From: Callorhinchus milii
Taxonomy: Eukaryota
DNA: 64,000 bases
Reading direction: 5' to 3'
NCBI RefSeq assembly: GCF_018977255.1
Contig: NW_024704807.1
Location: 1 to 64,000 of the forward strand
Part shown: piece by piece, positions 24,686-25,472 of the stretch
Numbering within the stretch: position 1 is the first letter of the stretch
Layout of the letters: each line of letters starts with the position of its first letter
The notes under the pieces: generated by a model
The model's database searches: none
What the model saw: only the letters and a program-made list of their open reading frames with translations
What the model was told of the DNA's origin: nothing
Translations under genes and position numbers: made by a program

Positions 24686-25076
24686 CACAATGCCGTATCT
24701 GGGCTTCCAACAATACAAAAAGCCCCGTCACCAACTCACAGGAGAAAACACAGAGAATGTGAAATTGCCGATGAGTTCAGTGCATGTTCCTCATTCGTGT
24801 GTAATGTGCAGCTATGTTTAAGAATACTTCCTTTAAGCAGCGACTGTCAGTTATGAATACTTAGGAAAAGTGAGTGTGTATCAATCTGAAGTTACTACGT
24901 TGTTTGAATTCATATACCTTATACATTTTTGCAAGAGACAGACGGCATGCAGATTTATTGAGAAAATATTCAAAAGAATTTTACACGTTATGTGATTAAT
25001 TGATCATTTGTAAATGGCAGAAATCATTTGAGTTGTATTGCAAACCTGTGTTTTTGTGTTGACATTAAACACTGTG

Positions 25077-25089
25077 CTGGCTGGGAAGC
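25077..25089 (+). other. NAR-TCR D segment, cassette 1 (CTGGCTGGGAAGC)
   Basis: TGTTTTTGT 25049-25057, 12 bp, CACTGTG, then D, then CACATTG 25090-25096, 12 bp, ACATATACT. Confidence 0.88.
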
Positions 25090-25472
25090 CACATTGGAAA
25101 AGATCTGCACATATACTGCATAGCTATTTTTACGGAAATACATGAGGATGGATCACCGATAATATTATCCTGTTTTATGCTCCCGAACGTGTGGAAAGTT
25201 GCCTTTCAAAATTAACTATTTCAAGCAGACGTTTTCTGTAATTATTTGCAGAAAGATGTTCTTCTCCCTGTGCGCTTTGTCTGTGTTTATGTGGAAAACT
25301 TACTGAAAATAAGCATGATTTGGAGAAACGAATATTATACAAATGGGACTGTGGTGGAAATATAGGAATTAGTTTCCAATTTGTCTGCATTTGCTGTTTT
25401 TTGTGCCAGGATTAAACCATTATGCGATAGAACAGTTTTTGCACCTTGTAGAATCAGAGTTGTGTCACTGTG

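What the first reader, a model, noticed from the sequence alone, without database searches (positions are those of the whole stretch)
24686..25472. The NAR module uses IgH-type RSS grammar (V-22/23, 12-D-12, 23-J) inside a TCR locus
Seen: the V has a 22-bp spacer, the single D has 12-bp spacers on both sides, and the J has a 23-bp spacer; all three cassettes agree. Established: TCR-delta uses 12-D-23 and 12-J, whereas 12-D-12 with 23-J is the IgH pattern. Inference: the module came from an IgH/IgNAR-type mini-cluster. It forbids direct V-J and D-D joins, so each NAR CDR3 should contain one D. Both D segments are stop-free in the three forward frames and encode Trp/Gly (WLG, GW).
Basis: partly seen in the sequence, partly recalled or inferred. 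Interest (0 to 1): 0.7.

Follow-up and report, generated by a model that had tools for sequence, protein, structure and literature searches.

The report
NAR-TcR V-D-J cassette signal grammar
This is the unrearranged V-D-J part of a known shark and chimaera "two-V" T-cell receptor gene (NAR-TcR); its antibody-heavy-chain-style joining signals are real and conserved in every cartilaginous fish checked here, but this is a known kind of gene, not a new system.

Summary
Observation confirmed. At 24686-25472 a VNAR-like V exon ends in a 22-bp-spacer RSS. One 13-bp D has 12-bp-spacer RSSs on both sides, and the J has a 23-bp-spacer RSS. D-like 12-core-12 structures occur three times in the window, once per cassette, and never in 300 simulations.

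"Three cassettes agree" overstates the support. Cassette 3 copies cassette 1 exactly in every functional element, inside a 98%-identical inverted duplication. Only cassette 2 (about 75% identical) is independent.

The unit is a complete NAR-TcR cassette: leader, NAR V, D, J with splice donor, then a leaderless supporting TCR-delta V. It sits among conventional V segments that all have 23-bp spacers. The nearest proteins are from Callorhinchus milii, so the genome is a chimaera.

I fetched homologous loci from eight elasmobranch species. All nine cassettes there show one D and a 22-bp V spacer. The D and J spacers are 12/12 and 22-23 wherever the nonamer is readable. In Mustelus the true J-delta segments use 12-bp spacers.

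The 12/23-rule consequences follow. The claimed IgH/IgNAR origin is not established: published work favours TCR-to-Ig transfer, and chimaeras lack IgNAR.

Side finding: V-D and D-J distances (about 390 and 380 bp) are conserved although the intervening sequence is not.

The parts
23969..24011 (+). Cassette 1 leader exon (MSLLCVSISFLFLQ plus 1 nt), donor GT at 24012
24400..24685 (+). Cassette 1 NAR-TcR V exon. It is VNAR-like, has an a-b loop Cys (EEC) and has FYRR in place of WYRK.
   Evidence: hallmarks as listed in PMC1845163
24686..24723 (+). Cassette 1 V-RSS: CACAATG, 22-bp spacer, ACAAAAAGC
25049..25076 (+). Cassette 1 D 5' RSS: nonamer TGTTTTTGT, 12-bp spacer, heptamer CACTGTG
25077..25089 (+). 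Cassette 1 D core CTGGCTGGGAAGC (13 bp)
25090..25117 (+). Cassette 1 D 3' RSS: CACATTG, 12-bp spacer, ACATATACT. This is the weakest nonamer (6/9, with T at nonamer position 6).
25434..25472 (+). Cassette 1 J-RSS: nonamer AGTTTTTGC, 23-bp spacer, heptamer CACTGTG
25473..25528 (+). Cassette 1 J coding (YYEEHTEDGSGTKVTVTK, phase 1). The donor is GTTAGT, where cassettes 2 and 3 have GTAAGT.
27310..27649 (+). Cassette 1 supporting TCR-delta V exon (27310-27610) plus its 23-RSS (27611-27649). It has no leader, starts at a splice acceptor and has a CDR1 Cys. A 1-bp deletion in the A-run at about 27491-27493 shifts the frame relative to the cassette 3 copy.
36199..36241 (-). Cassette 2 leader exon (MPLLCISISFLFLQ)
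35515..35797 (-). Cassette 2 NAR-TcR V exon
35477..35514 (-). Cassette 2 V-RSS: CACAGTG, 22-bp spacer, ACAAAAAAC
35080..35149 (-). Cassette 2 D with both RSSs. 5' RSS 35149-35122 (GCTTTTTGT, 12-bp spacer, CAATGTG). Core 35121-35108 (TTGGCTGGGGAAGG). 3' RSS 35107-35080 (CACACTG, 12-bp spacer, ACAAATACC).
34675..34767 (-). Cassette 2 J-RSS 34767-34729 (AGTTTTTGC, 23-bp spacer, GACTGTG) and J coding 34728-34675 (FKEYTEDGSPTKVTVTK), with donor GTAAGT
33901..34241 (-). Cassette 2 supporting TCR-delta V exon (34241-33940, intact, leaderless, CDR1 Cys) plus its 23-RSS (33939-33901)
46507..48065 (-). Cassette 3, an exact copy of every cassette 1 element: leader 48065-48023, V 47634-47349, V-RSS 47348-47311, D 5' RSS 46986-46959, D core 46958-46946, D 3' RSS 46945-46918, J-RSS 46601-46563, J 46562-46507
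44386..44726 (-). Cassette 3 supporting TCR-delta V exon (intact reading frame) plus its 23-RSS

Best explanation
The region is the germline V-D-J core of a NAR-TcR cassette in the TCR alpha/delta V region of a holocephalan (chimaera) genome.

Shown: each cassette is a self-contained mini-locus. In order it has a leader exon, a VNAR-like V with a 22-bp (23-class) RSS, one D flanked by two 12-bp RSSs, and a J with a 23-bp RSS and a phase-1 splice donor. A leaderless supporting TCR-delta V follows, which starts at a splice acceptor and carries its own 23-bp RSS.

Inferred mechanism: RAG joins D to J and V to D inside the cassette. The supporting V separately joins downstream D-delta/J-delta. Splicing then links leader, NAR VDJ, delta VDJ and C-delta into a three-domain delta chain.

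Under the 12/23 rule this grammar blocks V-to-J joins, so a D is obligatory.

Further inference: the grammar also insulates the module.
- The NAR J (23) cannot be captured by any of the locus's V segments (all 23).
- The NAR D 3' signal (12) cannot skip to TCR J segments (12).
- The only legal partners for these two signals are therefore each other, or those of another NAR cassette.

The grammar, the single D and the roughly 390/380-bp segment spacing are shared by chimaera, sharks, a skate and a sawfish. They therefore predate the split between holocephalans and elasmobranchs.
For: RSS anatomy and spacers.

Beyond chance: (3 D-like structures observed, 0 in 300 simulations).

Conservation: RSS elements are 73-100% identical between the two independent cassettes, against 66-70% for the V-D and D-J intervals.

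V domain identity:
- Full-length matches to solved VNAR domains, E about 1e-15.
- Pfam V-set match.
- a-b loop Cys and missing WYRK Trp, the hallmarks given in PMC1845163.

Leader, splice sites and the in-frame leaderless supporting V with a CDR1 Cys.

Context: about 14 conventional V segments, all with 23-bp spacers.

Homology to expressed chains: the conceptual V-D-J-supporting V protein is 44% identical (E 1e-58) to P0046, an expressed chain that continues into J-delta and C-delta.

Cross-species evidence:
- Seven elasmobranch cassettes from seven species, aligned with the two independent window cassettes, give V spacer 22 in 9/9. D 5' is 12 in 7/9, D 3' is 12 in 6/9 and J is 23 in 8/9. The rest are register ambiguities or degenerate nonamers.
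- A second Heterodontus cassette has the same grammar, and so does a Mustelus cassette.
- Five Mustelus J-delta segments upstream of C-delta all have 12-bp spacers.

Reference grammars from the literature: IgH is V23, 12-D-12, J23 (PMC2435157). TCR D segments are 12/23 (PMC3457774).
Against: - No rearranged or expressed sequence from this species was available, so D use, joining order and the insulation idea are inferred.
- The D 3' nonamer is weak (ACATATACT, 6/9).
- The cassette 2 J heptamer ends in C, and that J reads GSPT instead of a G-x-G motif.
- The cassette 1 supporting V has a frameshift and its J donor is GTTAGT. That copy may be a pseudogene or may contain assembly errors.
- NAR V (23-class) joining D-delta (12), and upstream V segments joining the NAR D 5' signal (12), remain legal. 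The insulation is therefore only partial.
- No D-delta with 12/23 spacers was found in any locus fetched. That half of the TCR comparison rests on the literature.
- C-delta is not in the window.
Confidence: 0.82

Rival explanations
1. One reading: the heavy-chain-type grammar is a historical relic. An IgH or IgNAR mini-cluster (V-D-J) was transplanted into the TCR-delta locus and kept its signals.
For: - The grammar equals the IgH grammar (PMC2435157).
- The segments lie about 390 bp apart, like the roughly 400 bp in nurse shark IgH mini-loci.
- The NAR V has a 22-bp spacer, unlike all neighbouring TCR V segments (23 bp). 22-bp spacers are also reported in bamboo shark IgNAR clusters (PMC8692893).
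Against: - The window is chimaera-like, and the elephant shark genome has NAR-TcR but no IgNAR or IgW (PMC3964593; PMC4279169).
- The literature favours the NAR-TcR V invading an IgW cluster.
- IgNAR has three Ds; this cassette has one in all eleven distinct cassettes examined.
- An older IgM-like donor is not excluded, but nothing here tests the direction of transfer.
Confidence: 0.3
2. The cassettes are decaying pseudogenes. The signals are inherited leftovers that are no longer used in this genome.
For: - The cassette 1 supporting V has a frameshift.
- The cassette 1 J donor is GTTAGT.
- The cassette 2 J lacks the G-x-G motif.
- The cassette 1 D 3' nonamer is weak.
Against: - Cassettes 2 and 3 have an intact leader, V, J, splice sites and supporting V.
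- RSS elements are better conserved than the intervening DNA.
- The CAC of all heptamers is intact.
- The architecture has been held for the whole depth of the cartilaginous fishes.
Confidence: 0.1
3. The agreement among three cassettes is partly an assembly artefact. Cassettes 1 and 3 would then be one locus (for example two haplotypes) placed twice in inverted orientation.
For: - The arms 12748-29613 and 59305-42413 are 98% identical.
- Arm A is bounded by N gaps on both sides.
- All functional elements of cassettes 1 and 3 are identical.
Against: - Inverted similarity continues beyond the gaps, at 96% and then 77% identity.
- A 2% divergence with a frameshift in one copy also fits a young real duplication.
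- Oppositely oriented cassettes also occur in Heterodontus.
- Either way the grammar claim stands on cassette 2 and the other species.
Confidence: 0.35

Closest known systems
Nurse shark NAR-TcR (Criscitiello, Saltis and Flajnik 2006, PNAS 103:5036; PMC1458790)
   Same: - A doubly rearranging TCR-delta chain with a VNAR-like N-terminal V that has its own D and J.
- A leaderless supporting delta V with a CDR1 Cys.
- An a-b loop Cys and loss of the WYRK Trp.
   Different: The window is from a different subclass (chimaera). I could not open the paper. My recollection that it shows a single D with the same spacers is unverified.
Elephant shark (Callorhinchus milii) NAR-TcR genes (PMC1845163; PMC3964593)
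   Same: The closest sequences found: supporting delta V models are 80-93% identical, with the same hallmarks.
   Different: In what I could read, those papers describe the proteins and the presence of the genes, not the RSS spacers or segment spacing (one search found no mention of 'RSS' or 'spacer'). No database protein matched exactly, so the window may be a paralogue or a related chimaera.
IgNAR gene clusters of elasmobranchs (PMC8692893; PMC4279169)
   Same: Related single-domain V, mini-cluster layout, and RSSs with 12-, 22- and 23-bp spacers.
   Different: - IgNAR has three Ds and needs four joins; this cassette has one D and needs two.
- The IgNAR J splices to Ig C exons; here the J splices to a TCR-delta V.
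- IgNAR was not found in the elephant shark genome.
Shark IgM heavy-chain mini-loci and the mammalian IgH grammar (PMC2435157)
   Same: V-23, D flanked by 12-bp spacers, J-23, with segments about 400 bp apart.
   Different: Shark IgM clusters have two Ds and an Ig C gene. The V domain here is not a VH.
Conventional TCR-delta grammar and TCR-mu of marsupials and monotremes (PMC3457774; PMC2275272)
   Same: The same locus type. TCR-mu is an analogous three-domain chain with an antibody-like N-terminal V.
   Different: - TCR D segments are asymmetric (12/23) and TCR J segments carry 12-bp spacers (J-delta in Mustelus).
- TCR-mu is described as convergent with NAR-TcR, not homologous to it.

Membership tests
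NAR-TcR | N-terminal V domain of the VNAR type | tested here: met
   Full-length matches to solved VNAR domains at E 1e-15 to 1e-13; Pfam V-set match.
NAR-TcR | Cys in the a-b loop and loss of the Trp of the WYRK motif (PMC1845163) | tested here: met
   ...RREECESLTINC... and MEFYRRF in cassette 1...KEECEALTISC... and MEFFMQF in cassette 2 (criteria).
NAR-TcR | NAR V has its own leader exon | tested here: met
   A 43-nt exon starting with ATG and encoding a hydrophobic signal peptide, followed by a GTAAGT donor, in all cassettes.
NAR-TcR | Dedicated D and J with RSSs, allowing a separate VDJ rearrangement | tested here: met
   The germline structure is present. Actual rearrangement cannot be observed with these tools.
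NAR-TcR | Supporting TCR-delta V that lacks a leader, begins at a splice acceptor and has a Cys in CDR1 | tested here: met
   The acceptor is in frame with the phase-1 J donor, and the CDR1 reads SGYCGQDF. The cassette 1 copy has a frameshift.
NAR-TcR | Lies in the TCR alpha/delta locus upstream of C-delta | tested here: inconclusive
   The cassettes are embedded among conventional V segments with 23-RSSs, but C-delta is not in the window. In Mustelus the homologous cassette lies about 22 kb upstream of C-delta.
NAR-TcR | Expressed as a three-domain delta chain | not testable with these tools
   Only homologous expressed chains from other species were found (P0046, P0054).
IgH-type RSS grammar | V with a 23-class spacer, D with 12-bp spacers on both sides, J with a 23-bp spacer | tested here: met
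   22, 12, 12 and 23 bp in both independent cassettes when spacers were free to vary from 10 to 26 bp. Reference grammar from PMC2435157.
Ig heavy-chain or IgNAR gene cluster | The J is followed by Ig constant exons; an IgNAR cluster has three Ds | tested here: not met
   The J is followed by a TCR-delta V exon. There is one D per cassette and no further D. IgNAR has 1 V, 3 D and 1 J.
Conventional TCR-delta grammar | D with 12/23 spacers and J with a 12-bp spacer | tested here: not met
   The NAR D is 12/12 and the NAR J is 23. True J-delta segments in Mustelus are 12. No 12-D-23 element is present in the window.

The most novel reading that the evidence does not exclude
The NAR module is an autonomous recombination unit whose geometry, as well as its signals, is under selection.
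- The V-to-D distance (380-393 bp) and the D-to-J distance (374-390 bp) have been held within a few percent across chimaera, sharks, a skate and a sawfish. Yet the intervening DNA of chimaera and elasmobranchs has lost all detectable similarity.
- The leader intron and the J-to-supporting-V intron vary several-fold over the same comparison.
- This would point to a physical constraint on RAG synapsis of closely spaced signals, for example a phase of about two nucleosome repeats.
- Together with the heavy-chain-type grammar acting as an insulator inside a TCR locus, it would suggest that the Ig mini-cluster layout was already present in the TCR-delta locus of the common ancestor, before IgNAR existed.
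Probability: 0.35. Interest if true: 0.6.

Novelty: new member of a known kind. Interest (0 to 1): 0.4.

Why it matters
NAR-TcR is the textbook case of an antibody-type single-domain V working inside a T-cell receptor. Whether that V began in a TCR or in an Ig is still argued.

This analysis shows that the heavy-chain-type signal grammar, the single D, the 22-bp V spacer and the roughly 390-bp segment spacing are already present in a chimaera. That lineage was reported to lack IgNAR and IgW. These features are also uniform across sharks, a skate and a sawfish.

The analysis gives concrete D cores and signals for repertoire studies. It also proposes a testable reason (insulation from TCR D and J segments) why the grammar is kept.

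It does not reveal a new kind of system.

Tried and rejected
1. Chance motifs. Rejected by simulation.

2. A second D, or a 12/23 D, between V and J. None was found. The only extra hits are weak and one-sided, or are the embedded TACTGTG heptamers at V ends.

3. The strong 12-RSS-like site at 21006 (mirror copy at 51029). It lies inside framework 1 of a conventional V exon, so it is a cryptic match and not a D.

4. Germline-joined VDJ in sharks. Public gene models (P0003 and others) looked like contiguous V-CDR3-J. The DNA showed unjoined V, D and J, with the models mis-spliced through the J RSS.

5. J or D relics in the intervening DNA. One J-like stretch (25125-25156) beats all 1000 shuffles, but it is absent from cassette 2 and from Cetorhinus. 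It is recorded only as a curiosity.

6. Prior art on the spacers. Criscitiello 2006, Ott 2021, Criscitiello 2010 and Roux 1998 are not held in the library. No held paper states the NAR-TcR spacers. The elephant shark genome paper's supplement is not held.

7. D-delta in a shark locus. None is recognisable in the 30 kb of Mustelus sequence from the NAR V to C-delta.

8. RIC scoring. The trained models are not available offline, so I used consensus matching with free spacer lengths.

9. An IgNAR genomic cluster for direct comparison. The exact-protein look-up could not reach one without a full-length IgNAR sequence, so the third protein search was not spent.

10. Loci L003 and L005-L007 were not visible to scripts. 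They were read directly and through the alignment tool.

No N stretch was filled or looked up.

Full report
**What is at the coordinates**

The interval 24686-25472 runs exactly from the first base of a V heptamer to the last base of a J heptamer.

Upstream, a 286-nt exon (24400-24685) encodes ASVTQTPSSIRREECESLTINC...EDSADYYCRARYDWD. It is followed by these elements:

| Element | Coordinates | Sequence |
|---|---|---|
| V-RSS | 24686-24723 | CACAATG, 22-bp spacer, ACAAAAAGC |
| D 5' RSS | 25049-25076 | TGTTTTTGT, 12-bp spacer, CACTGTG |
| D core | 25077-25089 | CTGGCTGGGAAGC |
| D 3' RSS | 25090-25117 | CACATTG, 12-bp spacer, ACATATACT |
| J-RSS | 25434-25472 | AGTTTTTGC, 23-bp spacer, CACTGTG |
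| J coding | 25473-25528 | YYEEHTEDGSGTKVTVTK, then a GT donor |

I let each spacer vary from 10 to 26 bp and picked the best nonamer. The result was 22, 12, 12 and 23 for both independent cassettes.

**More than chance**

- Convergent 12-RSS pairs around a short core occur three times in the window, once per cassette. They never occurred in 300 first-order Markov simulations.
- 12-RSS-like hits number 10, against 1.9 expected. 22/23-RSS-like hits number 26, against 0.53 expected.
- A relaxed scan found no other D of any spacer type between V and J or elsewhere. It found only the embedded TACTGTG heptamers at V ends.
- Between the two independent cassettes, RSS elements are 73-100% identical. 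The V-D and D-J intervals are 66-70% identical.
- Both D cores are open in all three forward frames: LAGK/WLGS/GWE and LAGE/WLGK/GWGR.

**How many replicates**

The window contains a large inverted duplication. The interval 12748-29613 matches 59305-42413 at about 98% identity.

Cassette 3 (minus strand, 46507-48065) is an exact copy of the cassette 1 leader, V exon, four RSSs, D core and J. Over 1.18 kb the two differ by one intergenic indel and one base in the J donor.

Only cassette 2 (minus strand, 34675-36241) is an independent witness. It is about 75% identical to the others. So "all three cassettes agree" is true but counts a duplicate as a replicate.

Arm A is bounded by N gaps, so an assembly origin for the duplication cannot be excluded. 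The inverted similarity does continue past the gaps at lower identity.

**What the unit is**

The V domain:
- It matches solved VNAR domains over its full length, with E about 1e-15.
- It has the a-b loop Cys and lacks the Trp of WYRK. PMC1845163 gives these as hallmarks of NAR-TcR V.

The rest of each cassette:
- Each cassette has its own 43-nt leader exon.
- Each J ends in phase 1 at a GT donor.
- Downstream lies a V exon with no leader. It begins at a splice acceptor in frame with the J and has the CDR1 Cys (SGYCGQDF).
- That exon ends in a 23-bp-spacer RSS. This is the supporting TCR-delta V described for NAR-TcR.

The cassettes sit among about 14 conventional V segments, all with 23-bp spacers.

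A conceptual leader-V-D-J-supporting V protein finds Callorhinchus milii supporting-V models at 80-93% identity as its nearest relatives. The genome is therefore a chimaera, though no database protein matched exactly. The same conceptual protein aligns at 44% identity (E 1e-58) with P0046, an expressed two-V chain that continues into J-delta and C-delta.

**Cross-species test**

Public gene models led me to homologous loci in these species:
- Cetorhinus
- Carcharodon
- Heterodontus (two cassettes)
- Chiloscyllium
- Scyliorhinus
- Mustelus
- Amblyraja
- Pristis

The models first looked like germline-joined VDJ. The DNA shows separate V, D and J, and the models are spliced through the J RSS.

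I aligned seven elasmobranch cassettes from seven species with the two independent window cassettes and analysed them with free spacers:

| Signal | Best spacer | Cassettes | Exceptions |
|---|---|---|---|
| V | 22 bp | 9 of 9 | none |
| D 5' | 12 bp | 7 of 9 | 13 bp in the two batoids (register ambiguity) |
| D 3' | 12 bp | 6 of 9 | 11 bp in the batoids; degenerate nonamer in Scyliorhinus |
| J | 23 bp | 8 of 9 | a 23/26 tie in Heterodontus |

Each cassette has one D of 13-16 bp.

The second Heterodontus cassette has the same grammar plus a roughly 560-bp repeat inserted between V and D. The Mustelus cassette also has the same grammar, with a 17-bp D and a best J spacer of 22.

In Mustelus the 30-kb locus runs from the NAR V to C-delta. 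Its five J-delta segments all have 12-bp spacers. The contrast between NAR J and TCR J is therefore shown directly in a shark. I found no D-delta there, so the 12/23 D-delta pattern rests on the literature (PMC3457774).

**How it most likely works**

The germline anatomy and its conservation are shown. The rest of this section is inferred.

Inside a cassette, the D 3' signal (12) pairs with the J signal (23). The V signal (22) pairs with the D 5' signal (12). V-to-J joining is barred, so one D is obligatory. The supporting V (23) joins downstream D-delta/J-delta independently, and splicing links the two assembled V exons.

The grammar also limits cross-talk within the locus:
- The NAR J (23) cannot be captured by any V (all 23).
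- The NAR D 3' end (12) cannot jump to TCR J segments (12).
- With the TCR-delta grammar both events would be legal, and either would destroy the two-V design.

The insulation is only partial. NAR V joining D-delta, and upstream V segments joining the NAR D, remain legal. Joins between cassettes are also legal.

The heavy-chain grammar and the roughly 390-bp spacing do resemble shark Ig mini-loci. Nurse shark IgH segments are about 400 bp apart (PMC2435157).

Against an IgNAR donor:
- IgNAR has three Ds (PMC8692893).
- The elephant shark genome has NAR-TcR but no IgNAR or IgW. Its authors read this as the single-domain V starting in a TCR-like gene (PMC3964593).
- Two further papers favour the NAR-TcR V moving into an IgW cluster (PMC4279169; PMC12227049).

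Nothing here decides the direction of transfer. An older Ig-type donor is not excluded.

**A side observation**

- The distance from the V heptamer to the D core is 391 and 393 bp in the chimaera and 380-392 bp in the seven aligned elasmobranch cassettes. The distance from the D core to the J heptamer is 383 and 379 bp against 374-390 bp.
- Yet the intervening sequences of chimaera and elasmobranchs are no more similar than shuffled DNA, with z between -1.4 and 1.7.
- Over the same comparison the leader intron differs about 2.5-fold, and the intron from J to the supporting V ranges from about 0.43 to 6.6 kb.
- One Heterodontus cassette tolerates a 560-bp insertion, so the constraint is not absolute.
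- Selection on length, perhaps through nucleosome phasing or synapsis geometry, is a hypothesis only.

**Known or new**

NAR-TcR has been known since 2006, and in the elephant shark since 2007. I could not open the 2006 paper. My memory that it already shows these spacers is unverified.

I file this as a new member of a known kind. The class-wide conservation and the length constancy are modest additions to what is known.

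Noticed in passing
window 12748-29613 and 42413-59305: A large inverted duplication at about 98% identity. Arm A is bounded by N gaps. All V segments left of about 30 kb are on the + strand and all those right of about 33 kb are on the - strand, so they converge on the centre. It could be a real palindromic duplication or an assembly artefact.
   Followed up: partly
window 24686-25472, compared with loci L001-L007: V-to-D (380-393 bp) and D-to-J (374-390 bp) distances are nearly constant across chimaera, sharks, a skate and a sawfish. 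The chimaera and elasmobranch intervening sequences show no detectable similarity (z between -1.4 and 1.7). The neighbouring introns vary several-fold.
   Followed up: partly
window 27491-27493: A 1-bp deletion in an A-run shifts the frame of the cassette 1 supporting delta V. The cassette 3 copy (44425-44726) is intact. This is either a pseudogene or a homopolymer assembly error.
   Followed up: partly
window 25531: The cassette 1 J splice donor reads GTTAGT, where cassettes 2 and 3 read GTAAGT.
   Followed up: no
window 25125-25156: A stretch just after the D 3' nonamer resembles the J coding sequence (TATTTTTACGGAAATACATGAGGATGGATCA). It beat all 1000 shuffles. It is absent from cassette 2 and from Cetorhinus.
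   Followed up: partly
window 24724-24760, 24856-24880 and 25269-25290: Blocks outside the RSSs that are 90-100% conserved between cassettes 1 and 2, against a background of about 68%. They include GAATACTTAGGAAAAGTGAGTG, which looks like a splice donor, and CTTTGTCTGTGTTT. Their function is unknown.
   Followed up: no
window 1048-1110, 8435-8497, 13920-13992, 14040-14111, 30217-30280, 57947-58009, 58061-58133: tRNA-like heads (Rfam tRNA, 32-45 bits), most of them inside a roughly 330-bp interspersed repeat family. These are probably tRNA-derived SINEs.
   Followed up: partly
window 21006-21033 (mirror copy 51029-51002): A near-consensus 12-RSS-like site (CACAGTG, 12-bp spacer, ACATATACC) lies inside framework 1 of a conventional V exon. 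It is a cryptic match, not a gene segment.
   Followed up: yes
window 34675-34728: The cassette 2 J encodes DGSPTKVTV, so it lacks the second Gly of the usual G-x-G motif. The same variant occurs in a Callorhinchus-like database protein (P0001).
   Followed up: no
window 26090-26182: A (GAAA)n/(GA)n microsatellite abuts the N gap at 26183-26311, inside the intron between J and the supporting V of cassette 1.
   Followed up: no
L001 (Cetorhinus) 10522, 10584, 10646: Three perfect 23-bp-spacer RSSs (CACAGTG, 23-bp spacer, ACAAAAACC) repeat at a 62-bp period directly after the supporting delta V.
   Followed up: no
L002 (Heterodontus) 16683-18300: A second NAR cassette lies in the opposite orientation, pointing towards the first cassette's supporting V. 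It has a roughly 560-bp repeat inserted between V and D. No supporting V of its own was detected downstream of its J in the locus fetched.
   Followed up: partly
L008 (Mustelus) 5512-6182: The supporting delta V ends only about 0.3 kb upstream of the first J-delta. No D-delta is recognisable anywhere between it and C-delta. All five J-delta segments carry 12-bp spacers.
   Followed up: partly
proteins P0001, P0003, P0005, P0007, P0010, P0012, P0013: Public gene models of NAR-TcR loci splice from the V exon into the J RSS region, so part of their apparent 'CDR3' is translated RSS. They carry misleading names such as DSCAM-like, Ig gamma-1-like and TCR alpha MC.7.G5-like.
   Followed up: yes
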